A stretch of 64,000 nt of DNA, taken from Stegostoma tigrinum (taxonomy: Eukaryota). Positions 5,242 to 58,800 of this stretch are shown piece after piece. The stretch covers positions 47,911,205 to 47,975,204 of the forward strand of contig NC_081365.1 in NCBI RefSeq assembly GCF_030684315.1. The letters are read 5' to 3'. Under the pieces are notes generated by a model, which saw only the letters and a program-made list of their open reading frames with translations, had not been told where the DNA came from and did no database searches. The translations under genes were made by a program, and so were the position numbers. Positions within the stretch are counted from its first letter, which is position 1. Each line of letters starts with the position of its first letter.

Positions 5242-5650
5242 ACCATGTTATAGCCCAACAGTTTTCTTCAGGGGATGAAGGGGCAGTGTTTCAACAGCTT
5301 GTGATTTCAGATAAACCTGTTGGACTGTAACTTGGTGTCGTGTGACTTCTGACCTTATTCGCCCAAGTCTAACACTGGGACCGCCACATCATATATTTGA
5401 TGTTGTGTTGGCACATTAGGGAAGGGAGAAGCACCAAAAAGACAAGCACTAAGAAGTTGGACAGGGTGAGTGATTTCTATTTAATTGTGAGTGCTGTGGA
5501 TAAAGATGTCAGTAAGAAGGATTTATGTGTTGCCCTTTTTTGTTGAATAATAACCAGGGGGATTCTGTGAAGTGAAATCTTAATTAGATGTGGCAGTGGT
5601 GAATGGCAGGCCTGTAGTGGTCAAAGAAAGCAACTTCATTAAAAACAGAG

Positions 5651-5867
5651 ATAACATGGTGTAGAGCTGGATGAACACAGCAGGCCAAGCAGAATCAGAA
5701 CAGCAGGAAAGGTGACATTCGGGTCGAGACCCTTCTTCAGAAAATGTCCTAACTTAGTCTGCTTAATGTCAGCTTTCCTGCTCCTCTGATGCCGCTTGGC
5801 CTGCTGTGTTCATCCAGTTCTATACCATGTTATCTCAGACTTTCCAGCATTGGCAGTACCTACTACC
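5651..5867. mobile_element. Miniature two-armed (inverted) PLE insertion, second subfamily
   Basis: Inverted copies of the PLE 3' end; 15-bp TSD TCATTAAAAACAGAG at 5636-5650 and 5868-5882. Confidence 0.85.
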
Positions 5868-6904
5868 TCATTAAAAACAGAGTCTGGATTTGCATTCTTT
5901 CTCAGCCCATCCAGAGAGACAGGGTGCACTCTGCCTCCATTTATTTCTCCTCTTCCTCATCGTTCTTTTCCTCCTCTTATTCCACCTCATACTACTCCCA
6001 AAGGTCTCTAGACAGAGGTAAACATGGAGCATGCAGCAGATTACTATATGATTTGAAACGCACTCTGAAATGAATTGTAAAGTTGTAAAAAGCAAACAAG
6101 GAAGTAGCAGTCTGGCTTGAGCAGCCGGAGACTCTGTTAAACCTTTGCATGACTCCTGCTCATCAATAATAATATTTCAGCTTGGCTTGATAAACTCTCT
6201 TTTGGTTTTCTGCTCCTGTCAAGGTTTCTTTATAACCTTGTATGAACAATATGGGTCAGTGAAACTTCAAAAACATGTCCAACATCATCAATCGTTTTGG
6301 AATCCTATTTGCAGCAAGGAAAATCAATTGTTAAATGTGCCTATACCCAGCAATGTAGAATAATTGGGAGTTATCTATATTGTTTATCTTTGCAAATTTA
6401 TTCTAGTAAATTTCAACACCAAGTAAAATTAGGAGCCGCAAGAATTATTTTTTGCATGAGATTGATAACTTTAAAAACGTAATTGAAGGCATTGAAAAGA
6501 AAATGCAATTTATTAGATGAATGTAATCATGTTATTGTAAGATGTTCAGATTTGAAATGTCAGTTCTGAAGATAAGCACAGCAAATTAAATGCTTTATCA
6601 CTGAACAATTTGGCAATTCTTGAATGAAAATATTGCTTCATGGCATGGCAGTTGCTACAGTTAGTGATGTTTTCACAGTTCATTAGAGTGCCACCAAGTG
6701 GAGTCTCAGGGCAGTATTGATATTTAACATGGAACTTCTCACTTAGTGTGATGCAAAGTTAATTGCAGATTGGGGTCTAACAAGTATTTGTGGTTGGTAA
6801 TTTGGATGGTTAACTGTTAGCATTTTAATGCAGGAAAGCCTAAAACAAGTTACATTTCAAATGGGATCCACAACCTACGGAGATATTTTATTTTCTTCTT
6901 TCGA

Positions 6905-7200
6905 GAGTCAGAGAATCCATATAGTGTGGCAGCGGGCCATTTGGCCCATCAGGTCACACTGACCCTCTGAAGAGCATCCCATCCAGACTCACTCCTCCGA
7001 ACCTAACACTGTAACCTTGTAATTCCCAAGGCTAATCCACCTAGCCTGGACTGTGGCAGGAAAGCAGAGCACCCAGATGAAACCCATGCAAACACAAGGA
7101 GAGCATGTGAGCTCCTCACAAACAATCACCCAAGTGTGGAAACAAACCTGGGTCCCTGGTTCTGTGAAGCAGCAGTGCTAACCACTGAACCACCATGCCT
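6905..7200 (-). mobile_element. HE1/V-SINE-like tRNA-derived SINE
   Basis: Reverse complement of the SINE at 41130-41470 (A-box GTGGTTCAGTGG, V-domain-like core, CR1-like tail). Confidence 0.7.
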
Positions 7201-8172: not shown

Positions 8173-8836
8173 ATAACAAAGTGTGGAGCTCGATGAACAC
8201 AGCAGGCCCAGCAGCATCTCAGGAGCACAAAAGCTGACGTTTCGGGTCTAGACCCTTCATCAGAGAGGGGGATGGGGAGAGGGAACTGGAATAAATAGGG
8301 AGAGAGGGGGAGGCGGACCGAAGATGGAGAGAAAAGAAGATAGGTGGAGAGGAGAGTATAGGTGGGGAGGTAGAGAGGGGATAGGCCAGTCCAGGGAAGA
8401 CGGACAGGTCAAGGAGGCGGGATGAGGTTAGTACGTAGGAGACGGAGGTGTGGCTTGGGGTGGGAGGAGGGGATAGGTGAGAGGAAGAACAGGTTAGGGA
8501 GGCGGAGACAGGCTGGGCTGGTTTTGGGATGCAGTGAGGGGAGGGGACGAGCTGGGCTAACCTCATCCCGCCTCCTTGACCTGTCCATCTTCCCTGGACT
8601 GACCTATCCCCTCCCTACCTCCCCACCTATACTCTCTTCACCACCTATCTTCTTTTCTCTCCATCTTCGGTCTGCCTCCCCCCTCTCCCTATTTATTCCA
8701 GAACCCTCTCCCCAATCCCTCTCTGAGGGCCTGAAACGTCAGATTTTGTGCTCCTAAGATGCTGCCTGGCCTGCTGTGTTCATCCAGCTTCGCACTTTCT
8801 TATCTTGGATTCTCCAGCATCTGCAGTTCCCATTCT
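8173..8836. mobile_element. Two-armed inverted PLE insertion (minus arm 8173-8558, plus arm 8557-8836)
   Basis: Both arms are the PLE 3' UTR with 3' ends outward; 16-bp TSD CAAAGGGA(T/C)TGCTAAT at 8157-8172 and 8837-8852; 2-nt junction overlap CT. Confidence 0.9.
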
Positions 8837-10411
8837 CAAAGGGACTGCTAATGGTGAGTAAAGAAAAAAAGCATTATAAATATTGAGAGGCTGAAAATGG
8901 TGGCATGCAAAATAATTTTGCTAACTTTATACAGGCATGACAGGACTTTGACATAACTGTACAGAAAGCAATTAGGAAAACACTTTTAACACCATTTACC
9001 AATTTCATTGCCAATATTTTCTTGAGCTATGAAAGGATATACTTTCATAGGAGTGAGTGCAATGGAACTTCACTAAACTGAGTTCTGGTATAAGGGGATT
9101 ACTCTCTGAGGAGAACCAACTAGTCTACACCTATATTCTCTTGTATTTTGGAAAATGAAAGCTACCTAACTACAATAATTTAAATTCCCAAGAGCCTGGG
9201 CAAGATAGATGATGGGCCAATGCTTTACAAAGCTTCTCTTGGCTGTGGAGTTTAGAAGTAAGTATCACAGTCTGAGAATAAGGGGTTGGTCACTTGGGAC
9301 TGAGAATGAAATAAATTACATTATTTAGTATCTCGAGATAATATGGGTTAGTTAGTTGAGACAAAAGGTAAACTGTGGTATTATAGAATAATGCAGCAGG
9401 TTTGAGGACTAAATAACCTGCTCCTAATCTATTTCTTACCTTTTTTACAGAAACACACAATATAGAAGAATGTCATACTGCCTGTGGTTGTGATTTAGTT
9501 CAGCTATCCAATTAGTTCCACATCTTGGCCTTTCTCCCATAGGCTTTCAAGAATTTATTTGAAAATTAATATTAATCTACTCTTTCCTCTGTTTTTAAGC
9601 TCATTATATAAACTGTGTCCTTCTATTACTAGAAATGTTTTCTCCTACACTATTTGATGAAATTTCTGTAAAGTCCAACCAATCTAATGATGTCACACAA
9701 TGGTGGTGAAAAGAGGAGTCTAGGTTGAGATCTTGATGGAAACAGATGTGTCATTGTTGTTCCCTGGCCAATCTTAAGTTACTATATTAAACTAGCCAAT
9801 GTTGATTGTATCTATTGCTAGTGTGCTATTGCTATCATTAAGGCAGGTGGTGCTCTAGTTAAAACTGATCAACGGTTGATCCTGTATTACTGTTAGCCAA
9901 ATGGTCGCTTGGACTAAATATAGAAAAGAGGATCGGTAGCAGTACAGTGCACATAGCATGTTAACAATGGTGAATAAAGACCATAACATCTAACAGAAAA
10001 TAAATTTTGGAAGTTAAGAGTTTGCTGCTTAAAATACATTGTCTCTTAAAGAATACCTAGTTAGATGGCACCTGCAAGTGCTTGAGCAAACAAGTAATTA
10101 GTGGAGTTGTGTCAGAAACAAGGCACTTCAGACTATAACTATCATTCAAACGAAATATGAGGCACAGAAGAACCAGCGTGAGATTTGGTATTCAACCGCC
10201 AATTTTGGACTTTTGTGAAGAAAGTTTAAAATCCCTGTTGGCAAGTAGAGAATCGTTAAATTAATGATGCTAAAGACCAAGTCATGAACACTAAGAATTA
10301 AAGAAGGGATCAGAGATAATGGGAACTGCAGATGCTGGAGATTCCAAGATAATAAAATGTGAGGCTGGATGAACACAGCAGGCCAAGCAGCATCTCAGGA
10401 GCACAAAAGCT

Positions 10412-10439
10412 GACGTTTCGGGCCTAGACCCTTCATCAG
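10412..10439 (-). ncRNA. Minimal type I hammerhead ribozyme motif in PLE 3' region
   Basis: CTGATGA-aGGGtctaggCCC-GAAA-C-GTC core with palindromic ACGT stem III, as known for PLE-encoded minimal hammerheads. Confidence 0.75.
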
Positions 10440-10663
10440 AGAGGGGGATGGGGGGAGGGAACTGGAATAAATAGGGAGAGAGGGGGAGGCGGACCGAAGA
10501 TGGAGAGTAAAGAAGATAGGTGGAGAGAGTGTAGGTGGGGAGGTAGGGAGGGGATAGGTCAGTCCAGGGAAGACGGACAGGTCAAGGAGGTGGGATGAGG
10601 TTAGTAGGTAGCGGGGGGTGCGGCTTGGGGTGGGAGGAAGGGATGGGTGAGAGGAAGAACCGG

Positions 10664-12129
10664 TTAGGGAGGCAGAGACAGGTTGGACTGGTTTTGGGAT
10701 GCAGTGGGTGGGGGGGAAGAGCTGGGCTGGTTGTGTGGTGCAGTGGGGGGAGGGTACGAACTGGGCTGGTTGAGGGATGCAGTAGGGGAAGGGGAGATTT
10801 TGAAACTGGTGAAGTCCACATTGATACCATATGGCTGCAGGGTTCCCAGGCGGAATATGAGTTGCTGTTCCTGCAACCTTCGGGTGGCATCATTGTGGCA
10901 GTGCAGGAGGCCCATGATGGACATGTCATCAAGAGAATGGGAGGGGGAGTGGAAATGGTTGGCGACTGGGAGGTGCAGTTGTTTTTTGCGAACTGAGCGG
11001 AGGTGTTCTGCAAAGCGGTCCCCAAGCCTCCACTTGGTTTCCCCAATGTAGAGGAAGCCGCACCGGGTACAGTGGATGCAGTATACCACATTGGCAGATG
11101 TGCAGGTGAACCTCTGCTTGATGTGGAATGTCATCTTGGGGCCTGGGATGGGGGTGAGGGAGGAGGTGTGGGGACAAGTGTAGCATTTCCTGCGGTTGCA
11201 GGGGAAGGTGCCGGGTGTGGTGGGGTTGGAGGGCAGTGTGGAGCGAACAAGGGAGTCACGGAGAGAGTGGTCTCTCCGGAAAGCAGACAGGGGAGGGGAT
11301 GGAAAAATGTCTTGGGTGGTGGGGTCGGATTGTAAATGGCGGAAGTGTCGGAGGATAATGCGTTGTATCCGGAGGTTGGTAGGGTGGTGTGTGAGAACGA
11401 GGGGGATCCTCTTGGGGCGGTTGTGGCGGGGGCGGGGTGTGAGGGATGTGTCGCGGGAAATGCGGGAGACGCGGTCAAGGGCGTTCTCGATCACCGTGGG
11501 GGGAAAGTAGCGGTCCTTAAAGAACTTGGACATCTGGGATGTGCGGGAGTGGAATGTCTTGTCGTGGGAGCAGATGCGGCGGAGGCGGAGGAATTGGGAA
11601 TAGGGGATGGAATTTTTGCAGGAGGGTGGGTGGGAGGAGGTGTATTCTAGGTAGCTGTGGGAGTCGGTGGGCTTGAAATGGACATCAGTTACAAGCTGGT
11701 TGCCTGAGATGGAGACTGAGAGGTCCAGGAAGGTGAGGGATGTGCTGGAGATGGCCCAGGTGAACTGAAGGTTGGGGTGGAAGGTGTTGGTGAAGTGGAT
11801 GAACTGTTCGAGCTCCTCTGGGGAGCAAGAGGCGGCGCCGATACAGTCATCAATGTACCGGAGGAAGAGGTGGGGTTTGGGGCCTGTGTAGGTGCGGAAG
11901 AGGGACTGTTCCACGTAACCTACAAAGAGGCAGGCATAGCTGGGGCCCATGCGGGTGCCCATGGCCACCCCTTTAGTCTGTAGGAAGTGGGAGGAGTCAA
12001 AAGAGAAGTTGTTGAGTGTGAGGACGAGTTCAGCTAGGCGGATGAGAGTGTCGGTGGAGGGGGACTGGTCGGGCCTGCGGGACAGGAAGAAGCGGAGGGC
12101 CTTGAGGCCATCTCCATGCGGAATGCAGG
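10664..12129 (-). CDS. PLE polyprotein, partial RT + GIY-YIG endonuclease (about 488 codons open; the ORF track's N-terminal ~22 aa come from flank)
   Basis: ORF 10664-12196; element sequence ends near 12129, judged by comparison with the older copy at ~63120. Confidence 0.9.
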
Positions 12130-12974
12130 AGTACTTTTGTTCGCAGTAGGTGCAGTGACCATGAAGCAGAGCTACTGTAGCAAAGTCAGGAACCATAGAA
12201 TTAAGTTACACTGGACTGCAGTATCAAGAATGTCATTGTCCTTTTATCACATTAAATGAGCCCAATTTAAAAGCTAGAAGGGACAGAGTCTAACAGAAAA
12301 AGATAATTTGAAGTCTTTTAAATCAATAAGAATGGGCGATTAAAGCACAATTTTGCCAAGAAATGTTTTTAAGGCTGCAACCATAAAGCTGTTTTGGAAA
12401 GTAATGCAAGGGGATATGCATTGTACTTCAGGCTGTGAAAGTTGGGAAAGTGTCCACTTTGTCAATGATAAAATGGAAAATCCTTAACTTAGCCGCAGAA
12501 AATGCAGAAAACTGCCACTTAACCTGCAGACGGCAGGAGACCACTATTTTGGGGGTAAAGGTGTGGGAAATCCACCAGTAAGCTGTATTGTTATTTAACA
12601 AAATTTAAAGCTTTATTAGAGAAAAAATACAGCATTGCTACAATATATGATTTATAGCTTTAAAAGAAGAAAATAATACAACTTTTTAAAGGTAAACAAG
12701 ATAAAACAGCATTATATAATGTAGACTATAAAATCTATTTAGCAGAGACAGAAACGCAGCAGTGTTTAGATAACACCGAAGACATCTTGAAAGGATGAAT
12801 CATAAATAATTACACCAAGAAGACATGGCAGGAGATATAATAATATTGTAGAGATTTAATTTCAGAGATGCACTAAATAAAACTCAATACTGGATATCTT
12901 AGTGAAAACAACACTTACGGCGCAGTTTTTCAGCATTAAATACTAAATCTGTAGTTGATTAAGTAAATACACTA

Positions 12975-13219
12975 AATGAAAAAAATACTGTGAATTTTAG
13001 AAATCAGAAACAAAAACAGAAGATGCTGGAAAAACTCAGCCAGTCTGCCAGCATCTGTGGCGAGAAGGCAGAGTCAACGTTTCAATTCCGGTGACCCTTC
13101 TTCAGAATGGAAGAATGGGTTCTGAAGAAGGATGATTGGATCCAAAACATTAATTTTGCATTCTCTCCACAGATGCTGCCAGCCCTGCTGAGATTTTCCA
13201 GCAATTTCTGTTTTTAAGC
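12975..13219. mobile_element. Old miniature two-armed PLE-type palindrome (third subfamily)
   Basis: Inverted arms with decayed CTGAAGA..AAAAC hammerhead-like core; 14-bp TSD AAGTAAAT(A/G)CACTA at 12961-12974 and 13220-13233. Confidence 0.7.
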
Positions 13220-13395
13220 AAGTAAATGCACTATTGTTTTCAATCGGACTTACAGCTGACAACATTCTCAATTTCCAAAATATAAAAGAAGGCACAGACA
13301 CTTTTGGGGATGCTCTTCAACTTTTTGATAATTAATTTAATCTGAATATGAACAAAAATCTTGAAAGAACAAGAGTTAGTAAAGAAGTTCACTAT

Positions 13396-15220: not shown

Positions 15221-16406
15221 AGAAAATTTCATTAATTATCTCCACAGATCAGTGGAAAACTTTGACTATAAAGCTTTGAAATCAGATTTGTATGAAACTG
15301 AATAATTTTAGAATCATTGATAAATTTTTGTCACATCTATTAAGGTCCTAAGAAAATTTGACTTTGGGAAAGGCTATTCAAAATGTGGTGGAAGGAACTC
15401 TGAGAGGAAAAGGAAAACCTCAATACAGGAGAGAAACAGAATCCACCCATATAGTATAAACACTCTGCAGGTACACTTGACAAGGCATCACAAAGAGTTA
15501 GTGCTGTGAATAAATGGTGCAAGTTGTACCAAGTTATGATATACATATGCTACCTCTGTAAAACTATAGGTCACTTCCTGAGGACGTGCAGAAGGAGGAC
15601 CCAGTTTCAAAGTTGCAAAAAGCTCAAATTCTTACTCATTTTAATGCTACAGAAACAGTAGGAAAGAGCATTCATAAAGTAAATTAGTAATTTAACTGAC
15701 TGAACTTTGACAGAATCTATTTGCGTTAATTGCGATCTCATTATTTTCTATCTTGATACAGGGGTCAGTCTCACTGTCTCATCAGTTGTCTCAAATCTAT
15801 AATGGATAGGATTATTGATAACTTACCTGATTGTATTTGCATTGCTGACCATATCATTGTCATAGGTGAGTTAAAGGCAGAGTATGAACATAATTTTCAG
15901 CTGCTGGTGACAACAATTCAATTCAATTCAAAGGACTAACATTTAACACAGTCAAATCAACATCAACCTGATAAACCTCTTTGGATCCATTTACTTTGAG
16001 CACGGAATCCATTTGATTCCAATTAAGATCAAGGATAATTAATAAATGCTGACCGCACAGGATGAAGAACATCTCCAAAGTTGCCTTGAATCTTTTTAAA
16101 TTTGCTATAGCTATACAATCAGCACCTTGCAGAAAAGGTTTTATCTGCTGGGGGATTAGCTCAAGATAGACATCTCCTATATGTGGGAATACAACTACCA
16201 ATTTGTCTTCACTTCTCTCAAGTAGGTTCTTTCAGCAAAATCTTTCTTATTGTAATACAATTACCCTAGAAAAGACATGATTCTCAAATGCAATGCATTG
16301 CAAAAAGTTTGCAAGACAAAAGACCTATTGCCTTGATTCTAAACCCTGTCGTTTGTACAGTATACATGTCTAGGAAGGTGGTATTATTGCCAAACAGGTA
16401 ATTCAG

Positions 16407-18015
16407 AGATAATAAAATGTGAGGCTGGATGAACACAGCAGGCCAAGCAGCATCTCAGGAGCACAAAAGCTGACGTTTCGGGCCTAGACCCTTCAACAGA
16501 GAGGGGGATGGGGGGAGGGAACTGGAATAAATAGGGAGAGAGGGGGAGGCGGACCGAAGATGGAGAGTAAAGAAGATAGGTGGAGAGGGTGTAGGTGGGG
16601 AGGTAGGGAGGGGATTGGTCAGTCCAGGGAAGACGGACAGGTCAAGGAGGTGGGATGAGGTTAGTAGGTAGCTGGGGGTGCGGCTTGGGGTGGGAGGAAG
16701 GGATGGGTGAGAGGAAGAACCGGTTAGGGAGGCAGAGACAGGTTGGACTGGTTTTGGGATGCAGTGGGTGGGGGGGAAGAACTGGGCTGGTTGTGTGGTG
16801 CAGTGGGGGGAGGGGATGAACTGGGCTGGTTTAGGGATGCAGTAGGGGAAGGGGAGATTTTGAAACTGGTGAAGTCCACATTGATACCATATGGCTGCAG
16901 GGTTCCCAGGCGGAATATGAGTTGCTGTTCCTGCAACCTTCGGGTGGCATCATTGTGGCACTGCAGGAGGCCCATGATGGACATGTCATCAAGAGAATGG
17001 GAGGGGGAGTGGAAATGGTTTGCGACTGGGAGGTGCAGTTGTTTGTTGCGAACTGAGCGGAGGTGTTCTGCAAAGCGGTCCCCAAGCCTCCGCTTGGTTT
17101 CCCCAATGTAGAGGAAGCCGCACCGGGTACAGTGGATGCAGTATACCACATTGGCAGATGTGCAGGTGAACCTCTGCTTAATGTGGAATGTCATCTTGGG
17201 GCCTGGGATGGGGGTGAGGGAGGAGGTGTGGGGACAAGTGTAGCATTTCCTGCGGTTGCAGGGGAAGGTGCCGGGTGTGGTGGGATTGGAGGGCAGTGTG
17301 GAGCGAACAAGGGAGTCACGGAGAGAGTGGTCTCTCCGGAAAGCAGACAGGGGAGGGGATGGAAAAATGTCTTGGGTGGTGGGGTCGGATTGTAAATGGC
17401 GGAAGTGTCGGAGGATAATGCGTTGTATCCGGAGGTTGGTAGGGTGGTGTGTGAGAACGAGGGGGATCCTCTTGGGGCGGTTGTGGCGGGGGCGGGGTGT
17501 GAGGGATGTGTCGCGGGAAATGCGGGAGACGCGGTCAAGGGCGTTCTCAATCACCGTGGGGGGAAAGTTGCGGTCCTTAAAGAACTTGGACATCTGGGAT
17601 GTGCGGGAGTGGAATGTCTTATCGTGGGAGCAGATGCGGCGGAGGCGGAGGAATTGGGAATAGGGGATGGAATTTTTGCAGGAGGGTGGGTGGGAGGAGG
17701 TGTATTCTAGGTAGCTGTGGGAGTCGGTGGGCTTGAAATGGACATCAGTTACAAGCTGGTTGCCTGAGATGGAGACTGAGAGGTCCAGGAAGGTGAGGGA
17801 TGTGCTGGAGATGGCCCAGGTGAAGTGAAGGTTGGGGTGGAAGGTGTTGGTGAAGTGGATGAACTGTTCGAGCTCCTCTGGGGAGCAAGAGGCGGCGCCG
17901 ATACAGTCATCAATGTACCGGAGGAAGAGGTGGGGTTTGGGGCCTGTGTAGGTGCGGAAGAGGGACTGTTCCACGTAACCTACAAAGAGGCAGGCATAGC
18001 TGGGGCCCATGCGGG
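16407..18015 (-). mobile_element. Young Penelope-like retroelement, 5'-truncated single arm (short 3' end)
   Basis: Near-identical to the 10310-12129 copy; 428-aa open frame 16724-18010; hammerhead core mutated to CTGTTGA; inserted into an old SINE. Confidence 0.95.
16724..18010 (-). CDS. PLE polyprotein fragment (RT C-terminal half + GIY-YIG)
   Basis: RYIDD, CNRRKCYTCPH, VVYCIHCTRCGFLYIGETKRRLGDRFAEH; no stops. Confidence 0.9.
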   Translation of the reverse strand: MGPSYACLFVGYVEQSLFRTYTGPKPHLFLRYIDDCIGAASCSPEELEQFIHFTNTFHPNLHFTWAISSTSLTFLDLSVSISGNQLVTDVHFKPTDSHSYLEYTSSHPPSCKNSIPYSQFLRLRRICSHDKTFHSRTSQMSKFFKDRNFPPTVIENALDRVSRISRDTSLTPRPRHNRPKRIPLVLTHHPTNLRIQRIILRHFRHLQSDPTTQDIFPSPPLSAFRRDHSLRDSLVRSTLPSNPTTPGTFPCNRRKCYTCPHTSSLTPIPGPKMTFHIKQRFTCTSANVVYCIHCTRCGFLYIGETKRRLGDRFAEHLRSVRNKQLHLPVANHFHSPSHSLDDMSIMGLLQCHNDATRRLQEQQLIFRLGTLQPYGINVDFTSFKISPSPTASLNQPSSSPPPTAPHNQPSSSPPPTASQNQSNLSLPP

Positions 18016-18275
18016 AGACCCAGGTATTGTTCTGGGGACCCGAGTCAAAATCCCACCATGGCTGATGGAGGAATTTAAATTCAATAAAAACTGCAACTAA
18101 TCAAGCTAAGAGAATAACCATGAAACCGTTGTTAATAGTCTAATGTCCTTTAGGGAAGGAAACTACCATCATTAGCTGGTCTGGTTGACATGTTACTCCA
18201 AACCCACAGCAATATTGTTGACTGTTAACTGTTAACAATTAGGGATGGGCAATAAATGCTAGCATTGCCAGCGAA
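18016..18275 (+). mobile_element. Old SINE-like repeat (5' part left of the PLE at ~16375-16406)
   Basis: Shared blocks AATCCCACCATGG, AATGTCCTTTAGGGAAGGAAA, GGGCAATAAATGCT also seen near 40390-41120 and 57340-57500. Confidence 0.5.
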
Positions 18276-18543: not shown

Positions 18544-18764
18544 ATGACGTGGAGGTGCCAGTGTTGGACTGGGGTGGACAAGGTCACAAATCACGTGACA
18601 CCGGGTTATAGTCCAACAGGTTTAGTTGAAAATACACGCTTTCAGAGCCACACTCCTTCTTCAGGTGTTGAACAGTCATACACCCGAAGAAGGAGTGAGG
18701 CTCTGAAAGATTGTATTTTCAAATAAACCTGTTGGACTATAACCTGGTGTCATGTGATTTCTGA
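18544..18764. mobile_element. Old miniature palindromic PLE-type element (fourth subfamily)
   Basis: Inverted arms (GGTTATAGTCCAACAGGTTT / AAACCTGTTGGACTATAACC) with CTGAAGA..GAAA hammerhead-like cores; left arm longer; a related element surrounds the 4505-5241 insertion. Confidence 0.65.
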
Positions 18765-19011
18765 CATAGATAATGAAGGTGAAGATCTTCTCACGGTTGA
18801 TTAGATTTTGGCCAGAGCCACAGTGAACAGTTGAAATTAGAAACTGCCAGAGATGATCAACTGTGAGACTTATATAAGAACATTATTTATGCCATGGCCT
18901 GACAGTATGAAATAAGTGTATGAGACAATTTGTTCATAAGAAGGACAAACTTGGTATATTGTGCCAGTTCATCTTCAAGAGCAAACAATATCAAAAGCAT
19001 TATGCCAAGAA

Positions 19012-20863
19012 AACAAAATGTGAGGCTGGATGAACACAGCAGGCCAAGCAGCATCTCAGGAGCACAAAAGCTGACGTTTCGGGCCTAGACCCTTCATCAG
19101 AGAGGGGGATGGGGAGAGGGAACTGGAATAAATAGGGAGAGAGGGGGAGGCGGACCGAAGATGGAGAGTGAAGAAGATAGGTGGAGAGAGTATAGGTGGG
19201 GAGGTAGGGAGGGGATAGGTCAGTCCAGGGAAGACGGACAGGTCAAGGAGGTGGGGTGAGGTTAGTGGGTAGATGGGGGTGCGGCTTGGGGTGAGAGGAA
19301 GGGATGGGTGAGAGGAAGAACCGGTTAGAAAGGCAGAGACAGGTTGGACTGGTTTTGGGATGCAGTGGGTGGAGGGGAAGAGCTGGGCTGGTTGTGTGGT
19401 GCAGTGGGGGGAGGGGACGAACTGGGCTGGTTTAGGGATGCAGTAGGGGAAGGGGAGATTTTGAAACTGGTGAAGTCCACATTGATACCATATGGCTGCA
19501 GGGTTCCCAGGCGGAATATGAGTTGCTGTTCCTGCAACCTTCGGGTGGTATCATTGTGGCAGTGCAGGAGGCCCATGATGGACATGTCATCTAGAGAATG
19601 GGAGGGGGAGTGGAAATGGTTTGCGACTGGGAGGTGCAGTTGTTTGTTGCGAACTGAGCGGAGGTGTTCTGCAAAGCGGTCCCCAAGCCTCCGCTTGGTT
19701 TCCCCAATGTAGAGGAAGCCGCACTGAGTACAGTGGATGCAGTATACCACATTGGCAGATGTGCAGGTGAACATCTGCTTAATATGGAATGTCATCTTGG
19801 GGCCTGGGATAGGGGTGAGGGAGGAGGTGTGGGGGCAAGTGTAGCATTTCCTGCAGTTGTAGGGGAAGGTGCCGGGTGTGGTGGGGTTGGAAGGCAGTGT
19901 GGAGCGAACAAGGGAGTCACGGAGAGAGTGGTCTCTCCGGAAAGCAGACAGGGCTGGGGATGGAAAAATGTCTTGGGTGGTGGGGTCGGATTGTAAATGG
20001 CGGAAGTGTCGGAGGATGATGCGTTGTAAGCCCCAAGATGACATTCCACATTAAGCAGAGGTTCACCTGCACATCTGCCAATGTGGTATACTGCATCCAC
20101 TGTACTCGGTGCGGCTTCCTCTACATTGGGGAAACCAAGCGGAGGCTTGGGGACCGCTTTGCAGAACACCTCCGCTCAGTTCGCAACAAACAACTGCACC
20201 TCCCAGTCGCAAACCATTTCCACTCCCCCTCCCATTCTCTAGATGACATGTCCATCATGGGCCTCCTGCACTGCCACAATGATACCACCCGAAGGTTGCA
20301 GGAACAGCAACTCATATTCCGCCTGGGAACCCTGCAGCCATATGGTATCAATGTGGACTTCACCATTTTCAAAATCTCCCCTTCCCCTACTGCATCCCTA
20401 AACCAGCCCAGTTCGTCCCCTCCCCCCACTGCACCACACAACCAGCCCAGCTCTTCCCCCCCACCCACTGCATCCCAATACCAGTCCAACCTGTCTCTGC
20501 CTCCCTAACCGGTTCTTCCTCTCACCCATCCCTTCCTCCCACCCCAAGCCGCACCCCCATCTACCCACTAAGCTCATCCCACCTCCTTGACCAGTCCGTC
20601 TTCCCTGGACTGACCTATCCCCTCCCTACCTCCCCACCTATACTCTCTCCACCTATCTTCTTCACTCTCCATCTTCGGTCCGCCTCCCCCTCTCTCCCTA
20701 TTTATTCCAGTTCCCTCTCCCCATCCCCCTCTCTGATGAAGGGTCTCCGCCCGAAACGTCAGCTTTTGTGCTCCTGAGATGCTGTTTGGCCTGCTGTGTT
20801 CATCTAGCCTCACATTTTGTTATCTTGGAATTCTCCAGCATCTGCAGTTCCCATTATCTCTGA
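19012..20863. mobile_element. Two-armed inverted PLE insertion (minus arm 19012-20028, plus arm 20030-20863)
   Basis: Both arms encode GIY-YIG + 3' UTR + hammerhead (19073-19100 minus; 20733-20760 plus); 14-bp TSD CATTATGCCAAGAA at 18998-19011 and 20864-20877; inserted in the Gypsy integrase region. Confidence 0.95.
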
Positions 20864-21611: not shown

Positions 21612-21845
21612 AGAACAAAGCTGCTGGAAAAGCTCAACAGGTCTGGCAGCATCTGTGAAGGGAAAAACAGAATTAATGTTTCAGGTCTGGTGACCCTTCC
21701 TCAGAACTAGTCCATGTCACCGGACCTGAAATGTTAACTCTGCTTTCTCCTTCATAGTAGCTGCCAGACCTAATGAGCTTTTCTAGCAACTTTGTTTTTG
21801 TTCCTGATTTACAGTATCTGCAGTTCTTTCAGATTTTATTTATTA
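21612..21845. mobile_element. Old miniature two-armed PLE-type palindrome (third subfamily)
   Basis: Inverted arms (GCTGGAAAAGCTCA..GGTCTGGCAGCATC / GCTGCCAGACC..TGAGCTTTTCTAGC); right arm longer; partial flanking repeat TGAATTAG. Confidence 0.65.
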
Positions 21846-24942: not shown

Positions 24943-25094
24943 ATAACAAAGTGTGGAGCTGGATTAACACAGTGGGCTAAGCAGCATCTTAGGAGCTTTT
25001 GTGCTCCTAAGATGCTGCTTGGCCTGCTGTGTTCATCCAGCGCCACACTTTGTTATCTCGGATTCTCTAGCATCTGCAGTTCCCATTATCTCTG
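24943..25094. mobile_element. Miniature two-armed PLE insertion
   Basis: 16-bp TSD ATTATATT(T/C)CTCAGAG at 24927-24942 and 25095-25110; junction microhomology AGC. Confidence 0.85.
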
Positions 25095-25393
25095 ATTATA
25101 TTCCTCAGAGGCTGCAGTTACAAGAACAAGTGAGTCTCCATTCCAGTGCCTTTTTCCAGAGAAGACAGAGGCTTCACACCAAACCAAGGCTACCAAAATT
25201 CCTAATATATGGCAACACCTGTCCTATCTAACCTAGTCTGTAGGCTTTCAACCTCATTCTCTCCATAGTTACGGTACGAGTATTTAGAAAACACCAAGGA
25301 TTTATGTTCCTCTCCTGATCAAGGGGATTAAAATAATTGTTTGCATTGGTCACCTGATGACATGACTGTTTTTTACATGTCTTGCATTTGCAT

Positions 25394-45258: not shown

Positions 45259-45264
<6 letters not shown>

Positions 45265-48639: not shown

Positions 48640-51185
48640 ATGGGTGTTACAGTCATGCTGTATTTGTACAGGATATTGATGAGGCCTCTTCTGGAATATT
48701 GTCTCCAGTTCTGGTCACCCAGTTATAGGAAGGATATTATTAAGCTAGAGATCGTTCACATTAGATTTACCAGGATGTTGCTGGGTATGGTGGGTTTGAG
48801 TTATAAAGGAAGCCTGTTTAGGCTCAGAGATAATGGGAAATGCAGATGCTGGAGATTCCAAGATAATAAAATGTGAGGCTGGATGAACACAGCAGGCCAA
48901 GCAGCATCTCAGGAGCACAAAAGCTGACGTTTCGGGCCTAGACCCTTCATCAGAGAGGGGGATGGGGGGAGGGAACTGGAATAAATAGGGAGAGAGGGGG
49001 AGGCGGACCGAAGACGGAGAGTAAAGAAGATAGGTGGAGAGGGTGTAGGTGGGGAGGTAGGGAGGGGATAGGTCAGTCCAGGGAAGACGGACAGGTCAAG
49101 GAGGTGGGATGAGGTTAGTAGGTAGCTGGGGGTGCGGCTTGGGGTGGGAGGAAGGGATGGGTGAGAGGAAGAACCGGTTAGGGGGGCAGAGACAGGTTGG
49201 ACTGGTTTTGGGATGCAGTGGGTGGGGGGAAGAGCTGGGCTGGTTGTGTGGTGCAGTGGGGGGAGGGGATGCACTGGGCTGGTTTAGGGATGCAGTAGGG
49301 GAAGGGGAGATTTTGAAACTGGTGAAGTCCACATTGATACCATATGGCTGCAGGGTTCCCAGGCGGAATGTGAGTTGCTGTTCCTGCAACCTTCGGGTGG
49401 CATCATTGTGGCACTGCAGGAGGCCCATGATGGACATGTCATCAAGAGAATGGGAGGGGGAGTGGAAATGGTTTGCGACTGGGAGGTGCAGTAGTTTGTT
49501 GCGAACTGAGCGGAGGTGTTCTGCAAAGCGGTCCCCAAGCCTCCGCTTGGTTTCCCCAATGTAGAGAAAGCCGCACTGGGTACAGTGGATGCAGTATACC
49601 ACATTGGCAGATGTGCAGGTGAACCTCTGCTTAATGTGGAATGTCATCTTGGGGCCTGGGATGGGGGTGAGGGAGGAGGTGTGGGGACAAGTGTAGCACC
49701 AACCGCCCCAAGAGGATCCCCCTCGTTCTCACACACCACCCTACCAACCTCCGGATACAACGCATTATCCTCCGACACTTCCGCCATTTACTATCCGACC
49801 CCACCACCCAAGACATTTTTCCATCCCCTCCCCTGTCTGCTTTCCGGAGAGACCACTCTCTCCGTGACTCCCTTGTTCGCTCCACACTGCCCTCCAACCC
49901 CACCACACCCGGCACCTTCCCCTGCAACCGCAGGAAATGCTACATTTGTCCCCACACCTCCTCCCTCACCCCCATCCCAGGCCCCAAGATGACATTCCAC
50001 ATTAAGCAGAGGTTCACCTGCACATCTGCCAATGTGGTATACTGCATCCACTGTACCCGGTGCGGCTTCCTCTACATTGGGGAAACCAAGCGGAGGCTTG
50101 GGGACTGCTTTGCAGAACACCTCCGCTCAGTTCGCAACAAACTACTGCACCTCCCAGTCGCAAACCATTTCCACTCCCCCTCCCATTCTCTTGATGACAT
50201 GTCCATCATGGGCCTCCTGCAATGCCACAATGATGCCACCCGAAGGTTGCAGGAACAGCAACTCATATTCCGCCTGGGAACCCTGCAGCCATATGGTATC
50301 AATGTGGACTTCACCAGTTTCAAAATCTCCCCTTCCCCTACTGCATCCCTAAACCAGCCCAGTGCATCCCCTCCCCCCACTGCACCACACAACCAGCCCA
50401 GCTCTTCCCCCCCACCCACTGCATCCCAAAACCAGTCCAACCTGTCTCTGCCCCCCTAACCGGTTCTTCCTCTCACCCATCCCTTCCTCCCACCCCAAGC
50501 CGCACCCCCAGCTACCTACTAACCTCATCCCACCTCCTTGACCTGTCCGTCTTCCCTGGACTGACCTATCCCCTCCCTACCTCCCCACCTACACCCTCTC
50601 CACCTATCTTCTTTACTCTCCATCTTCGGTCCGCCTCCCCCTCTCTCCCTATTTATTCCAGTTCCCTCCCCCCATCCCCCTCTCTGATGAAGGGTCTAGG
50701 CCCGAAACGTCAGCTTTTGTGCTCCTGAGATGCTGCTTGGCCTGCTGTGTTCATCCAGCCTCACATTTTATTAGCCTGTTTAGGCTGGCCTTTTTTTCAC
50801 TGGAGTGTAGGAGATTGAGAGGTTTATAGAGGCTTATAAAAATCATGAGGCGTGTTGACAGGGTTAATGATAGTTGACTTTTCCCTGGATGGGGAATATT
50901 AAGATTGGGAGCATATTTTTAAGGTGAGAGGAGAGAGATTTAAAAAAGACATGAGAGGCAATTTTTTTCCACGAATGGTGGTTCGCATGTGGGTGACACT
51001 CCTGAGGAAGTGGCGGATGTGGATAAAGTTACAAAATTTAAAAGTCATTTAGATAAATACATGAATAAGAAATGTGTGAGGGATATGGGCCAGGAGCAGG
51101 CAGATGGAACTAGTTTAGTTTAGGATTATTTTCGGCATGCGCTGGTTGGTCCAAAAGGTTCTATTTCTGTGCTGTATGACTCTAT
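48640..51185 (+). mobile_element. CR1 3' fragment nested in the Harbinger transposase, split by a PLE pair
   Basis: LYRILMRPLLEYCLQFWSP on the left; continuation and TGTATGACTCTATG tail on the right of the PLE. Confidence 0.8.
48825..50772. mobile_element. Two-armed inverted PLE insertion (minus arm 48825-49698, plus arm 49700-50772)
   Basis: 14-bp perfect TSD AGCCTGTTTAGGCT at 48811-48824 and 50773-50786; hammerheads at 48926-48953 (-) and 50684-50711 (+). Confidence 0.95.
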
Positions 51186-54023: not shown

Positions 54024-55323
54024 GATAATGGGAACAGCAGATGCTGGAGAATCCAAGATAATAAAATGTGAGGCTGGATGAACACAGCAGGCCAAGCAGC
54101 ATCTCAGGAGCACAAAAGCTGACGTTTCGGGCCTAGACCCTTCATCAGAGAGGGGGATGGGGTGAGGGTTCTGGAATAAATAGAGAGAGAGGGGGAGGTG
54201 GACCGAAGATGGAGAGAAAAGAAGATAGGTGGAGAGAGTATAGGTGGGGAGGTAGGGAGGGGATAGGTCAGTCCAGGGAAGACAGACAGGTCAAGGAGGC
54301 GGGATGAGGTTAGTAGGTAGGAAATGGAGGTGTGGCTTCGGGTGGGAAGAAGGGATGGGTGAGAGGAAGAACCGGTTAGGGAGGCAGAGACAGGTTGGAC
54401 TGGTTTTGGGATGCAGTGCATGGAGGGGAAGAGCTGGGCTGGTTGTGTGGTGCAGTGGGGGGAGGGGACGAACTGGGCTGGTTTTGGGATGTGGTGGGGG
54501 GAGGGGAGATTTTGAAGCTGGTGAAGTCCACATTGATACCATTGGGCTGCAGGGTTCCCAAGCGGCATATAAGTTGCTGTTCCTGCATCCACTGTACCCA
54601 GTGTGGCTTCCTCTACATTGGGGAAACCAAGCGGAGGCTTGGGGACCGCTTTGCAGAACACCTCCGCTCAGTTCGCAATAAACAACTGCACCTCCCAGTC
54701 ACAAACCATTTCCACTCCCCCTCCCATTCTTTAGATGACGTGTCCAGCATGGGCCTCCTGCAGTGCCACAATGATGCCACCCGAAGGTTGCAGGAACAGC
54801 AACTCATATTCCGCTTGGGAACCCTGCAGCCTAATGGTATCAATGTGGACTTCACCAGCTTCAAAATATACCCTTCCCCCACCGCATCCCAAAACCAGCC
54901 CAGTTCGTCCCCTCCCCCCACTGCACCACACAACCAGCCCAGCTCTTCTCCTGCACCCACTGCATCCCAAAACCAGCCCAGACTGTCTCTGCTTCCCTAA
55001 CCGGTTCTTCCTCTCACCCATCCCTTCCTCCCACCCCAAGCTGCACCTCCATTTCCTACCTACTAACCTCATTCCGCCTCCTTGACCTGTCTGTCTTCCC
55101 TGGACTGACCTATCCCCTCCCTACCTCCCCACCTATACTCTCTTCTCCACCTATCTTCTTTTCTCTCCATCTTCAGTCCGCCTCCCCCTCTCTCCCTATT
55201 TATTCCAGCTCCCTCTCCCCATCCCCCTCTCTGATGAAGGGTCTAGGCCCGAAACATCAGCTTTTGTGCTCCTGAGATGCTGCTTGGCCTGTTGTGTTCA
55301 TCCAGCCTCACATTTCATTATCT
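54024..55323. mobile_element. Two-armed inverted PLE insertion (minus arm 54024-54587, plus arm 54583-55323)
   Basis: TSD TTCATCCAAATGCAGT at 54008-54023 and 55324-55339; 5-nt junction microhomology CTGCA; hammerheads at 54121-54148 (-) and 55231-55258 (+, GTC>ATC). Confidence 0.95.
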
Positions 55324-55689
55324 TTCATCCAAATGCAGTTCTGCAAATGTGACACGACCACGTGCAACAACACAAAATGATACTGGACAAACTAACGGAT
55401 CAATTTATGATTGTTTATTTCATATGTACATGTGGAGAGCCAGCTTTATCACCATGACATGCGAGGTTCATGCTTATCGGTTACAAAATACATTCCAGCT
55501 TCTTACAGACCATTGCTCTTCTCTGTCTCACATTACGTTTTGTTTCCCACACTCTTTAGAGGCATCCTCTGCATTTCATTCAAGGCCAGACCTAATTTGC
55601 TGATACTGCACATTTGGCCTGTCTTAGTTTATCTGTGGTTCCCCTTTCCTTTGACAATATGACTGAAAATTTAACTCTTCACTAACTGA

Positions 55690-55884
55690 GATAGTAGGAA
55701 CTGCTGATGCTGGAGGATCTGAGATAACACAGTGTAGAGCTGGATGAACACAGCAGGCCAAGCAGCATCAGAGGAGCAGGAAAGCTGACGTTTTTTTCTG
55801 AAGAAGTGTCTCGACCCGAAACGTCAGCTTTCCTGCTCCTCTGATGCTGCTTGGCCTGCTGTGCTCATCCAACTCTACACCGTA
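55690..55884. mobile_element. Miniature two-armed PLE insertion (second subfamily)
   Basis: 14-bp TSD TCTTCA(C/A)TAACTGA at 55676-55689 and 55885-55898; hammerhead-like core CTGAAGA..GAAACGTC at 55798-55825. Confidence 0.85.
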
Positions 55885-58800
55885 TCTTCAATAACTGAAA
55901 CTGATTCAACCCCTTCGGCTGTCAAATATAATTTGTTTCTCATTGATCTTCAGTGTGTATAACACATGATCAGATGAAATGTGCTAATCTGTTCTGTATT
56001 TGTAATCTTGAAACTGTTTAAAAATCTTATGAATTATAAATTCCACATTTGCCAATTTGTTGATCTATTAAATAGATCTGAAAGCTTACATTCTTCTGGT
56101 GCAGAGATTGAAACTGGTGAATTTGTTGTATTGTTTGACTGTTGACAGGCTATTAAAGTTATTGATATGGATGTTTATAGGAATGAATTTGTTCTCTTTG
56201 TACTTAACTCATTTTGTAATCTTGTTACATTCTAAGCTGATTACAGTTTTAGTTTGTAAATGTTGTTGGTGTAGTACTAACACAGAGAGTTGTTTAAGTT
56301 CCTGCTGCTCCAAATGCTAATTTCAATGTAATGTAGGGTTTTCTGTTACTGATATGGCTTCTTCACAGGGGTGAACTGAAAATAGGTTGCTGACACTGGT
56401 GCATGCGCTATACATTACTTAGATTCGCATTTGGGGTTTTGAATAGAGAGAAGGAGTGAGAATAGTGCATATGATGTGTCCCTGGAGATGGCAGGAGAGT
56501 GGGGGACTAGGCGATGTGGCATAGGACAGAGGGGCAGAATGTGGAGTGAGAGTGAGACAGAGGGGAGAGGGCTTCCACTCCATTCCACGTTCCCCACCCC
56601 CAACCTGGTCCTCACACCCTCTGCTGAACGTTCTTTCAGTATCACGTCATCTCTGCACATTCACTGTGTGGTCATTGTGTGTAATATTATCGAAAATTCG
56701 CACCATGTTATGGGTTTCGAATTGTGTATATGAGCATTTCCAGATTAGCAAATATGAGCAGTTGCAGGCGTCAGTAGATAGTGCCTTGAAAATCTTCCTT
56801 TTCCAAGATTGACAAAGGTTTTTGAGTTGAAATGTTCTCAATCTGACTTCATGCAAATAGATCCCATGATTTTTCTGACTGTATTAAAGATATCTACTGT
56901 AACATCATTGGCATTTATCTTTTCTTTGCAATCTAGGTATTTTTGTGGTGAATTTGATACTACATGATTAGTTTTGCACATTTTTCTTTACCCAAATTTC
57001 TGCCTTCTAACTAATGAAATTGATAACATTTCTTTGTTCTGTAAAACTTCAAATTTGCTATTCAAATGGTGGAAGTAATAAAGACTTCACGAGTTTCACT
57101 GTTAGGGCTTTGAGACATCAATTTGCAATATATATTCCTGATTTTGTTTCCATTTGCCAACAATGTTATTTAATCATGCGCCTGCAGAACTATCTTAAAT
57201 TTGCTTTGTTAAAGTTTCCATTGATTAAATAGTTCGGGAAATTTTTTAACTCAGTGTTAGAAGTCTAAAATATGGGCTCCTCAGCTTAACTCTTTCATAA
57301 AAGTTAACCTTTTATGACCTTTGCCTTAAGTGACTGGATCTGTTATCCTGACCTGGACTGGCCAATATGTAATTCCAGATTCAGAGTAATGTGATTGTCT
57401 CATAACTGCTCTTTGAAATAGCCGTAGCAAGCCACTCTATTCAAGAGGCAGTTAGGGACAGGCAATAATTGCTGGCGCCATCAGAAACACTCTCATCTGA
57501 TGAACAAAGGGGGAAAAGATACTCTTTCATGACTTATAATTTTCTGGTGGTTTGTCTAGAGGGGTTTCCATGCAGAAATAATTCCTTCATGGTGACTGTT
57601 CAGCGTTACGGTTTTTCTGGCTGCTGGATGGTCTTAAACCTGTACCAATGATTTCTTGAGAAGAGTTTTTAAACATTCTTTTCTTCTCCATTGAATTTGG
57701 GTTTTTTTTAAGGCTGGTCCCGGAGAAGGTAGTATCAAGGGCCGTCATCAAGCTGAGCCTTCACTATGTATTGTCATGCATTAATGCTGTGATACATGGT
57801 AATCACACTGGGCTCCGAATTATAACAACTCATTTACCTTCTTCACATGTTTAGATTCAGGTGATCTCAATGTGTCTTTCTGAGAGAGTATTGCAGCTTA
57901 GAGTCCTGTAGTCATCTTCCAGAGTGTTGTGACTGCCCACACAGTGGTATTTATGCTCAGCTCTGTGTAATTCCATGACATCATGATAATTGGGGTCCTA
58001 ATCCACTGACACAACATTATTAGTCAGCATATTAAAATTTGTTCTGTGAAAACAAAGGCCTGGATCATGTGGAGGTAATCATTGTTGTATTAACAGCTCT
58101 TTCCTTGAAAGCAGTGAACAATTTCCAAACTATAATTGTAGAGATGCAATAGCAAACTCACACCTGTCTATTGAATATTTTCATTTCTTATGCTATATAG
58201 TGAAAATCTATGGCGCATACTTACCCGGAGCACTTACAGAAAACAGTTATCTTCAGACGGCTACAAGCGCATCTTTGACAAGTTAGCAACAAAGCGTGCT
58301 GTGAGAAAGACAGACAAATCCAAATTTTAAATATCAATCAACAGCTTTCAATTTATAAGCTATTTACCACATTTCTAAGTTCTAACTGCATCTTGTCTTG
58401 GGACAGTTCCACTATCCATAAACTGGACTCCAGAAACATAATATGTTCTGACACATTTTTGACTGTATTTATGTACAAATAAAGTGGACTTACAGATTTC
58501 TCTTTTAAGGCTATTTAGCTAACAAAACATACAGTAAGAAAGAAAAAAAACTCTAACCACACAAAGCACGAATAAACAAAGTAAGTATTTATCTGTCGCT
58601 TACTTGGAACACACTGCACTCTGTTTTGACTATGCCATCAGTTTCTGAGGTTTTCCCTCTGACTGGTGTCTGCCTCTTTGCTCTGCATAGCGTCTGTTGG
58701 TGCAGTCTTTCACACTGTTTAAACCTGCATTGTAATTAACGGTTTCTATACTCCCTAGAACCTTCAACCCCTTTCTCTTTATCAGACCCAGTCTTGATCA

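What the first reader, a model, noticed from the sequence alone, without database searches (positions are those of the whole stretch)
5636..55898. Penelope-like elements integrate as two-armed, tail-outward inverted pairs inside one 14-16 bp target-site duplication
Seen: at least ten insertions consist of two 5'-truncated copies of the same PLE 3' end in opposite orientation, 3' ends outward, bracketed by a single 14-16 bp direct repeat. They are 5651-5867, 8173-8836, 12975-13219, 19012-20863, 24943-25094, 34326-34550, 37102-37234, 48825-50772, 54024-55323 and 55690-55884; three older ones have decayed flanks. One TSD per pair means one integration event. This differs from L1 twin priming, where the inverted piece is a different, upstream part of the RNA. 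Established: PLEs are RT + GIY-YIG retroelements, and inverted terminal repeats were reported for Drosophila virilis Penelope, so the geometry has precedent. Inference: a ~15-nt staggered cut is primed on both strands, each 3'-OH copying the RNA 3' end, and the two truncated cDNAs are joined in the middle. In this window it is the majority outcome.
Basis: partly seen in the sequence, partly recalled or inferred. Interest (0 to 1): 0.85.

Follow-up and report, generated by a model that had tools for sequence, protein, structure and literature searches.

The report
Shark Penelope elements' inverted insertion pairs

Summary
All ten listed pairs and three older ones are head-to-head inverted pairs of 5'-truncated Penelope-like element (PLE) 3' ends. 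Ten carry a 13-16-match flanking direct repeat; random site pairs reach 13 matches in 3 of 2000 trials. Three have weaker 8-9-match repeats.

The geometry is not new. Arkhipova 2013 and Craig 2021 describe the adjacent inverted 5'-truncated copy, the single TSD around the unit and a 30-40 bp tail at one end only. Frangieh 2024 showed in vitro that a lizard PLE protein cleaves and extends both DNA strands from two adjacent RNA start sites, with the tail lying between them.

The window adds four points:
- All 13 pairs have exactly one tailed arm.
- The tailless arm reaches further 5' in 9 of 11 scorable pairs, which argues against snap-back models.
- Both arms of a pair always belong to the same subfamily.
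- The two cleanly bounded solo copies have 7-9 bp repeats.

Two-strand target-primed reverse transcription is the best explanation, at about 0.6. The scan has noted such pairs in other windows of this genome.

The parts
5651..5867 (+). Pair P1: tailless arm 5651-5741 (antisense), 23-nt filler, tailed arm 5765-5867 (sense). TSD 5636-5650 / 5868-5882 (15/15).
8173..8836 (+). Pair P2: tailless arm to 8558 (antisense), tailed arm 8557-8836. Tailless arm reaches about 124 nt further 5' by ref q (102 in my working list). TSD 8157-8172 / 8837-8852 (15/16).
12976..13220 (-). Pair of a diverged PLE-derived family: tailed arm on the left (about 37-nt tail), tailless arm on the right, 12-nt spacer. TSD 12962-12975 / 13221-13234 (about 12/14).
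18548..18765 (-). Old pair of another diverged family: 35-nt tail 18548-18582 on the left arm, arms 18583-18668 / 18680-18765. Decayed repeat AGAT(T/A)ATGA at 18539-18547 / 18768-18776 (8/9).
19012..20863 (+). Pair P3: tailless arm 19012-20028 (antisense, 225 nt longer, holds the EN coding part), 1-nt filler, tailed arm 20030-20863. TSD 18998-19011 / 20864-20877 (14/14).
21616..21845 (+). Old pair of a diverged family: tailless arm on the left, tailed arm on the right (about 51-nt tail 21795-21845). Repeat TGAATTAG(A/G)A at 21606-21615 / 21846-21855 (9/10).
24943..25095 (+). Pair P4: tailless arm to 24996, tailed arm from 24994 (3-nt overlap), starting at the first base after the predicted hammerhead cut. 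TSD 24928-24942 / 25096-25110 (14/15).
29997..30168 (+). Weak repeat 29986-29995 / 30169-30178 (9/10).
34326..34550 (-). Pair P6: tailed arm 34326-34451 (antisense), 4-nt filler, tailless arm 34456-34550. TSD 34311-34325 / 34551-34565 (15/15).
37102..37234 (-). Pair P7: tailed arm 37102-37191, tailless arm 37190-37234 (2-nt overlap; 48-nt arms 100% complementary). TSD 37087-37101 / 37235-37249 (15/15).
48825..50772 (-). Pair P8, the youngest large pair: tailed arm 48825-49698, 1-nt filler, tailless arm 49700-50772 (238 nt longer). Arms 99.2% alike. TSD 48811-48824 / 50773-50786 (14/14).
54024..55323 (-). Pair P9: tailed arm 54024-54587, tailless arm 54583-55323 (206 nt longer; 5-nt overlap). 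TSD 54008-54023 / 55324-55339 (16/16, of which up to 4 nt may belong to the tail).
55690..55884 (-). Pair P10: tailed arm 55690-55793, 3-nt filler, tailless arm 55797-55884. TSD 55676-55689 / 55885-55898 (13/14).
2701..2806 (+). Solo A: 5'-truncated tailless copy with no inverted partner. Abutting repeat CATTAATTC (9 bp).
4503..5242 (+). Solo B: 5'-truncated tailless copy. Abutting repeat ACCATGT (7 bp).
10310..12190 (-). Solo C: the longest copy, tailed, truncated within the RT coding part (ORF 10664-12196). Repeat unclear: AGAATTAA, not abutting the tail end.
16401..18022 (-). Solo D: 5'-truncated copy without a tail. Short repeat CAGGTA(A/T)T. Its end reads as if the tail between two ATTATCT motifs were skipped.

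Best explanation
These are single integration events of endonuclease-containing Penelope-like elements (and short derivatives of them), made by target-primed reverse transcription on both DNA strands. The RT-EN protein, probably a dimer, nicks the two strands about 14-16 nt apart, leaving 3' overhangs. Each 3'-OH primes a cDNA on sense element RNA: one from the distal start site (giving the arm with the 35-40-nt tail) and the other from the proximal start site (the tailless arm). Both cDNAs stop short of the RNA 5' end. Their 3' ends are then joined head to head, by a reciprocal template switch or by microhomology-assisted end joining. Fill-in of the overhangs gives the one TSD around both arms. 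Shown here: the geometry, the single TSD, one tailed arm per pair, and the different inner junction in each pair. Shown by others in vitro: cleavage and extension of both strands, and the two start sites. Inferred: that the two strands use different start sites in vivo, and how the middle is joined.
For: (1) A single 13-16-match TSD brackets both arms in 10 of 13 pairs, with weaker repeats in the other 3; chance gives 13 or more matches in 3 of 2000 trials. (2) All 13 pairs have exactly one tailed and one tailless arm. If the ends were chosen independently, the probability is at most 0.5^13 = 1.2e-4. The two clusters of end points (0-8 and mostly 30-42 nt from the full end) match the 'two adjacent RT start sites, tail between them' of Frangieh 2024. 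(3) The same paper shows the purified PLE protein cleaving and extending both top and bottom strands, and predicts a dimer. (4) The unpaired spacer is contiguous with the tailless arm in all four large pairs (about 124, 225, 238 and 206 nt by ref q) and in 9 of 11 scorable pairs. A fold-back of the tail-first cDNA would give the opposite. A fold-back of a tailless-first cDNA could not create the tail. So both arms need their own RNA-templated start. (5) Inner junctions differ in every pair and show 1-23 nt of filler or 2-5 nt of overlap, as expected for joined cDNA ends, so the pairs are not copies of one palindromic master. (6) Both arms of each of the 10 main-family pairs are of the same subfamily, and partner arms rank first for private shared variants in P3 (5) and P8 (3). 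(7) Thousands of other head-to-head joints occur in independent short-read contigs of the species.
Against: Nothing in genomic sequence shows the order of events or which nucleic acid was the template. In vitro the start site did not differ between the strands, so the strict one-of-each rule seen here is unexplained by published data and rests on 13 pairs in one window. The lead of the tailless arm is not significant on its own (8 of 10 main-family pairs, sign test p = 0.11), and two short pairs go the other way by 9-11 nt. No empty allele or orthologous empty site could be examined. Joining of the two cDNAs has never been observed experimentally.
Confidence: 0.6

Rival explanations
1. Single-strand TPRT followed by snap-back: one cDNA is made, its 3' end folds back on itself and copies the cDNA, and this makes the second arm.
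For: Short palindromic overlaps (2-5 nt) at some inner junctions. Partner arms are very similar. Arkhipova 2013 inferred a propensity for self-priming from palindromes at inverted junctions.
Against: If the tailed arm came first, the loop or spacer should be contiguous with it; in 9 of 11 pairs it is contiguous with the tailless arm, by up to 238 nt. If the tailless arm came first, copying it back cannot generate the 35-40-nt tail and would run into target DNA. No inverted flank duplication is seen.
Confidence: 0.1
2. Self-priming on an antisense transcript, as favoured in Arkhipova 2013: a hairpin of antisense RNA and its cDNA gives the head-to-head form and is then integrated.
For: It was proposed in the literature to explain head-to-head rather than tail-to-tail pairs, and it fits intron retention.
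Against: It does not predict that exactly one arm lacks the tail, nor end points that match the two RT start sites on sense RNA found in vitro. It needs an unknown way to integrate a hairpin within a 15-bp staggered cut. No antisense RNA evidence was available here.
Confidence: 0.08
3. Two sequential insertions: a second copy homes into the 5' end of an earlier one in opposite orientation, because the endonuclease recognises its own element sequence.
For: PLE endonucleases cut within their own terminal sequence in vitro. The element is extremely abundant.
Against: Each event would make its own TSD, yet here the outer 3' ends of both arms abut the two copies of one TSD, in 10 pairs cleanly. The arms are of the same subfamily and of similar decay. 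All 13 pairs keep the one-tail rule.
Confidence: 0.03
4. Copies of a palindromic master element (MITE-like), or palindromes created by the assembler.
For: The commonest genome-wide joint is symmetric at one position (48954 to 50683). Large, near-perfect palindromes are a known assembly hazard.
Against: Every pair in the window has different truncation points in its two arms. The arms have diverged from each other by 0.8-20%. Small pairs lie within the span of single short-read contigs, and such joints occur in independent runs. The arms contain PLE coding sequence.
Confidence: 0.03

Closest known systems
Canonical insertion architecture of endonuclease-containing Penelope-like elements (Evgen'ev & Arkhipova 2005; Arkhipova 2013, PMC3846280; Craig et al. 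2021, PMC8557442)
   Same: An adjacent inverted 5'-truncated copy, head-to-head orientation, one short TSD around the whole unit, a 30-40-bp tail at one end only, a hammerhead motif in the terminal repeat, and high 5' truncation.
   Different: In this window most events are just two truncated arms, without a full-length copy or a direct pseudo-LTR. TSDs are longer (13-16 bp) than the 8-10 bp quoted for rotifer copies. The one-tail rule is strict (13/13), where the papers say 'often' or 'optionally'.
Poseidon PAc of Anolis carolinensis in vitro (Frangieh et al. 2024, PMC11167929)
   Same: Two adjacent internal cDNA start sites with the tail between them. The hammerhead overlaps an ATG, with the cut site about 25 nt downstream. 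Both DNA strands are cleaved and extended. A dimer is predicted.
   Different: In vitro there was no strand difference in start site, and no joined two-armed product was described. Here each genomic event uses each start region once. The start regions here carry ATTATCT rather than an AC-rich loop.
LINE-1 twin priming (Ostertag & Kazazian 2001; cited from my own knowledge)
   Same: The second target-strand 3'-OH also primes cDNA synthesis, giving an inverted segment within one TSD.
   Different: In L1 the second primer anneals internally on the RNA, so the inverted piece is a different, upstream part. Here both arms cover the same 3' region and differ only by the tail.
R2 non-LTR element, two-subunit model of integration (from my own knowledge; recent R2 work is listed)
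   Same: Two protein subunits act on the two strands of one target.
   Different: In R2 the second strand is not used to prime a second RNA-templated cDNA, and no inverted pairs result.

Membership tests
Endonuclease-containing Penelope-like element (Penelope/Poseidon-type) | Single ORF with a reverse transcriptase followed by a C-terminal GIY-YIG endonuclease | tested here: met
   ORF 10664-12196(-) has RVT_1 then GIY-YIG in that order (both below Pfam's curated cut-offs). The translation shows YIDD, a Cys-rich linker and VVYCIHC..YIGET..H..H. There are 929 relatives at E<=1e-10, many carrying PF00078 and PF01541 and up to about 890 aa long.
Endonuclease-containing Penelope-like element (Penelope/Poseidon-type) | Minimal hammerhead ribozyme motif in the terminal repeat | tested here: met
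   CTGANGA-N(8-30)-GAAAC occurs 15 times against 1.2 expected, always in the element's 3' module. The layout fits the min-HHR of Cervera & de la Pena 2014. Rfam models give no hit. Cleavage activity is not testable here.
Endonuclease-containing Penelope-like element (Penelope/Poseidon-type) | Pseudo-LTRs formed by partial direct tandems around a full-length copy | tested here: inconclusive
   No full-length copy and no direct partial tandem is present in the window; all copies are 5'-truncated.
Endonuclease-containing Penelope-like element (Penelope/Poseidon-type) | 30-40-bp tail extension present at only one end of the insertion unit | tested here: met
   13 of 13 pairs have one tailed arm. 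Tail about 30-42 nt in most of the main family, and 35-51 nt in the diverged families.
Endonuclease-containing Penelope-like element (Penelope/Poseidon-type) | Inverted 5'-truncated copy adjacent, head to head, within one TSD | tested here: met
Endonuclease-containing Penelope-like element (Penelope/Poseidon-type) | RT groups with PLE/telomerase RTs in a phylogeny | not tested
   No tree was built; only similarity to unnamed relatives was seen.
LINE-1-type twin-priming inversion | The inverted segment is an upstream, essentially non-overlapping part of the same RNA | tested here: not met
   Both arms align to the same 3' region of the reference copy.
Snap-back (self-primed hairpin) cDNA | The loop or spacer is contiguous with the first-made arm, and both arms end at the same outer point or run into the flank | tested here: not met
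   The spacer belongs to the tailless arm in 9 of 11 pairs, the outer ends differ by the tail, and no inverted flank is present.
DNA transposon / MITE with terminal inverted repeats | Copies share one internal structure and fixed termini | tested here: not met
   The inner junctions differ in every pair, and the arms are retroelement coding sequence plus 3' UTR.

The most novel reading that the evidence does not exclude
Both arms of a pair are copied from one RNA molecule held by a dimeric RT-EN. The two start sites, about 35-40 nt apart and each marked by ATTATCT, are each used once: one by the 3'-OH of each target strand. The cDNA from the proximal site runs ahead, the one from the distal site follows by strand displacement, and the two polymerases finish by switching onto each other's cDNA. 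This single model would explain four observations: the strict one-tail rule, the lead of the tailless arm, the shared private variants, and the shorter repeats of solo copies (only one end primed, the other end joined after trimming).
Probability: 0.25. Interest if true: 0.6.

Novelty: already known. Interest (0 to 1): 0.3.

Why it matters
How Penelope-like elements integrate is still called undefined by the specialists, and the only biochemical study stops at first extension. The quantitative regularities of these very abundant shark copies could serve as in vivo constraints on the missing steps, and they can be tested genome-wide at no cost. Those regularities are one tailed arm per event, the tailless arm usually the longer, concordant subfamilies, and TSDs of about 15 bp for pairs against 7-9 bp for the clean solo copies. 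They also matter practically: such palindromes break short-read assemblies and confuse repeat annotation.

Tried and rejected
- Rfam at gathering and E-value thresholds found no hammerhead family. The motif was found only with a hand-written pattern.
- An RNA fold of the 136-nt 3' module was no more stable than shuffled sequence (z = +0.88), so no structure is claimed for the start sites.
- Pyatkov et al. 2004 is not held, so what I say of it comes from its citation and from memory.
- Read laying: contigs break at the repeat, so the junctions of P8 itself were not bridged. A contig reaches only about 25 nt into P9. The other organisms hold the element but not the unique flanks, so no orthologous empty site could be examined.
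- Nearest-neighbour analysis of partner arms is only modestly informative: the partner is (tied) nearest for 11 of 20 arms, with many ties among young consensus-like copies.
- Target-site ATT preference and microhomology at the tailless junction (0-6 nt, typically 2-3) were read by eye but not tested statistically.
- The repeats of solo copies C and D are uncertain. The pairs-versus-solos difference (Mann-Whitney p = 0.007) therefore rests on only two clean solos.
Full report
**What is there.** An inverted-repeat scan of the window finds 13 close inverted pairs and no others. I mapped them by blastn, first with the 3' 224 nt of one arm and then with the longest copy in the window (10310-12700, minus strand). 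Ten pairs belong to one family (P1-P10) and three to more diverged relatives (at 12976, 18548 and 21616). In all 13 the two arms are 5'-truncated copies of the same 3' region in opposite orientation, with the 3' ends pointing outward.

The arms are Penelope-like element (PLE) sequence:
- The longest ORF (10664-12196, minus strand) has RT motifs including YIDD, then a Cys-rich linker, then a C-terminal GIY-YIG with interleaved Cys/His.
- Its 929 relatives at E<=1e-10 include proteins of up to about 890 aa carrying RVT_1 and GIY-YIG. The closest are from zebra shark (94%), whale shark (88%) and bamboo shark. This agrees with earlier scan notes that call the genome zebra shark.
- Downstream of the ORF lie a C-rich UTR and a minimal hammerhead core, CTGATGA-helix II-GAAACGTC. 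The pattern occurs 15 times against 1.2 expected. Rfam does not call it, but it fits the published min-HHR description.

**Target-site duplications.** I searched 42-nt zones at both outer ends of each pair, allowing one mismatch. Ten pairs have 13-16 matching bases directly abutting the arms. P5 and the pairs at 18548 and 21616 have 9/10, 8/9 and 9/10. The same search on 2000 random site pairs reached 13 or more matches three times.

In every pair one arm runs to the full end (0-8 nt from the end of the reference). The other stops mostly 30-42 nt earlier in the main family and 35-51 nt earlier in the diverged families. If the end points were chosen independently, 13 mixed pairs out of 13 has probability at most 1.2e-4.

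**This is already known.**
- Arkhipova et al. [quoted passage not shown] They state that head-to-head is the most frequent arrangement.
- Craig et al. [quoted passage not shown] They call the mechanism undefined.
- Frangieh et al. 2024 purified a lizard PLE protein. It cleaves and extends both top and bottom strands, unlike R2 and L1. It starts cDNA at two adjacent internal RNA sites, and the genomic tail is the sequence between those sites. The protein is predicted to be a dimer.

I found no paper that explicitly derives the inverted pair from it, or that uses 'twin priming' for PLEs. The shark element shares the lizard element's layout: the hammerhead overlaps an ATG, the predicted cut lies about 25 nt downstream, and the two start regions lie about 85-95 and 125 nt downstream.

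**Mechanism: what the window can discriminate.**
1. Sequential insertion is excluded by geometry. The outer 3' ends of both arms abut the two copies of one TSD.
2. A palindromic master copy is excluded. Each pair has its own pair of truncation points.
3. Snap-back models fail.
   - The unpaired spacer is contiguous with the tailless arm in all four large pairs: by 225, 238 and 206 nt in P3, P8 and P9, and by about 124 nt in P2 from the ref q values. The same holds in 9 of 11 scorable pairs; the two exceptions go the other way by 9 and 11 nt. So a fold-back of a tail-first cDNA is contradicted.
   - A tailless-first cDNA copied back on itself could not produce the tail.
   - Hence both arms need their own RNA-templated start.
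4. The inner junctions show 1-23 nt of filler or 2-5 nt of overlap, as expected for two cDNA ends joined by template switch or end joining.
5. Both arms are of the same subfamily in all ten main-family pairs. Partner arms rank first among all combinations for private shared variants in P3 (5) and P8 (3), but only weakly in P9 and P2. This fits one event and one source, though two transcripts of one master would look the same.

A TSD with both 3'-OH ends used as primers requires nicks that leave 3' overhangs of TSD length, which is the usual TPRT geometry. That step is inference.

**Independent data.** Contigs from two other samples of the same species cover the unique flanks of P8 and P9 with at most one difference. 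Summed word depth over the element is in the millions, against 15-30 on the flanks. The contigs also contain 3654 distinct joints from the antisense arm to the sense arm, which are head-to-head pairs at other loci. The commonest (48954 to 50683, in 55 and 43 contigs) is symmetric at reference position about 2261, just upstream of the hammerhead core. The same position is the 5' end of five arms in the window. No listed contig bridged P8's own junctions.

**Solo copies.** Four 5'-truncated copies have no partner: three tailless (A, B, D) and one tailed (C). A and B have clean abutting repeats of only 9 and 7 bp; those of C and D are unclear. Pairs against solos differ (Mann-Whitney p = 0.007), but on very few solos.

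**Verdict.** The single-event reading is supported, and two-strand TPRT is the best explanation (about 0.6). The finding restates the published hallmark of PLE insertions, so it counts as already known. The residual interest lies in three things: the strict one-tail rule, the lead of the tailless arm, and the possible one-RNA, two-polymerase model. All three need a genome-wide census.

Noticed in passing
window 10310-10360 and the same module in all copies (alignment): Both cDNA start regions carry the same short motif about 40 nt apart: proximal ..TTTTATTATCTTGG.. and distal ..CCCATTATCTCTGA. Related subfamilies keep TATCT at both sites. Solo copy D (16401) ends TTATTATCTCTGA, as if the tail between the two motifs had been skipped.
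   Followed up: partly
reference position q2258-2267 (for example window 34451/34456, 48954, 50683): The 5' ends of arms cluster just upstream of the hammerhead core CTGATGA. This point is also the commonest head-to-head joint, and a frequent end of copies joined to unrelated DNA, in genome-wide contigs. It may mark a strong RT stop or the 5' end of an abundant short template RNA.
   Followed up: partly
window 24994-25095: The tailed arm of P4 begins at q2290, the first base after the predicted hammerhead cut (GAAACGTC|AGC). The arms of P1, P7 and P10 begin within about 20 nt of it. This hints that self-cleaved RNA is sometimes the template, although the 2024 in vitro study found cleavage dispensable.
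   Followed up: no
window 2701-2806, 4503-5242, 10310-12190, 16401-18022: Solo 5'-truncated copies have much shorter or unclear flanking repeats (9, 7, about 8 not abutting, 6-8 bp) than the pairs (13-16).
   Followed up: partly
window 48700-50900 and 53900-54299: The element family is extremely abundant in the species: summed word depth is in the millions, against 15-30 on unique flanks. It is shared at 90% or more with at least two other organisms, which do not hold the flanking DNA.
   Followed up: partly
window 13584-15232, minus strand: Two adjacent ORFs with strong RVT_1 matches (E 1e-13 and 1e-14), split by a frameshift. This is a different, LINE-like retroelement beside the PLE copies.
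   Followed up: no
window 62199-63111, minus strand: A more diverged PLE copy (79-85% to the reference) lies near the end of the window. Its ends were not examined.
   Followed up: no
window 18023-18250: The 5' end of solo copy D abuts an unrelated repeat-like sequence (GGTATTGTTCTGGGGACCCGAGTC...), possibly a SINE. The order of insertion was not resolved.
   Followed up: no
relatives listed: Most relatives carry precomputed domains PF26215 and PF28514. My Pfam scan did not report them, and I could not name them.
   Followed up: no
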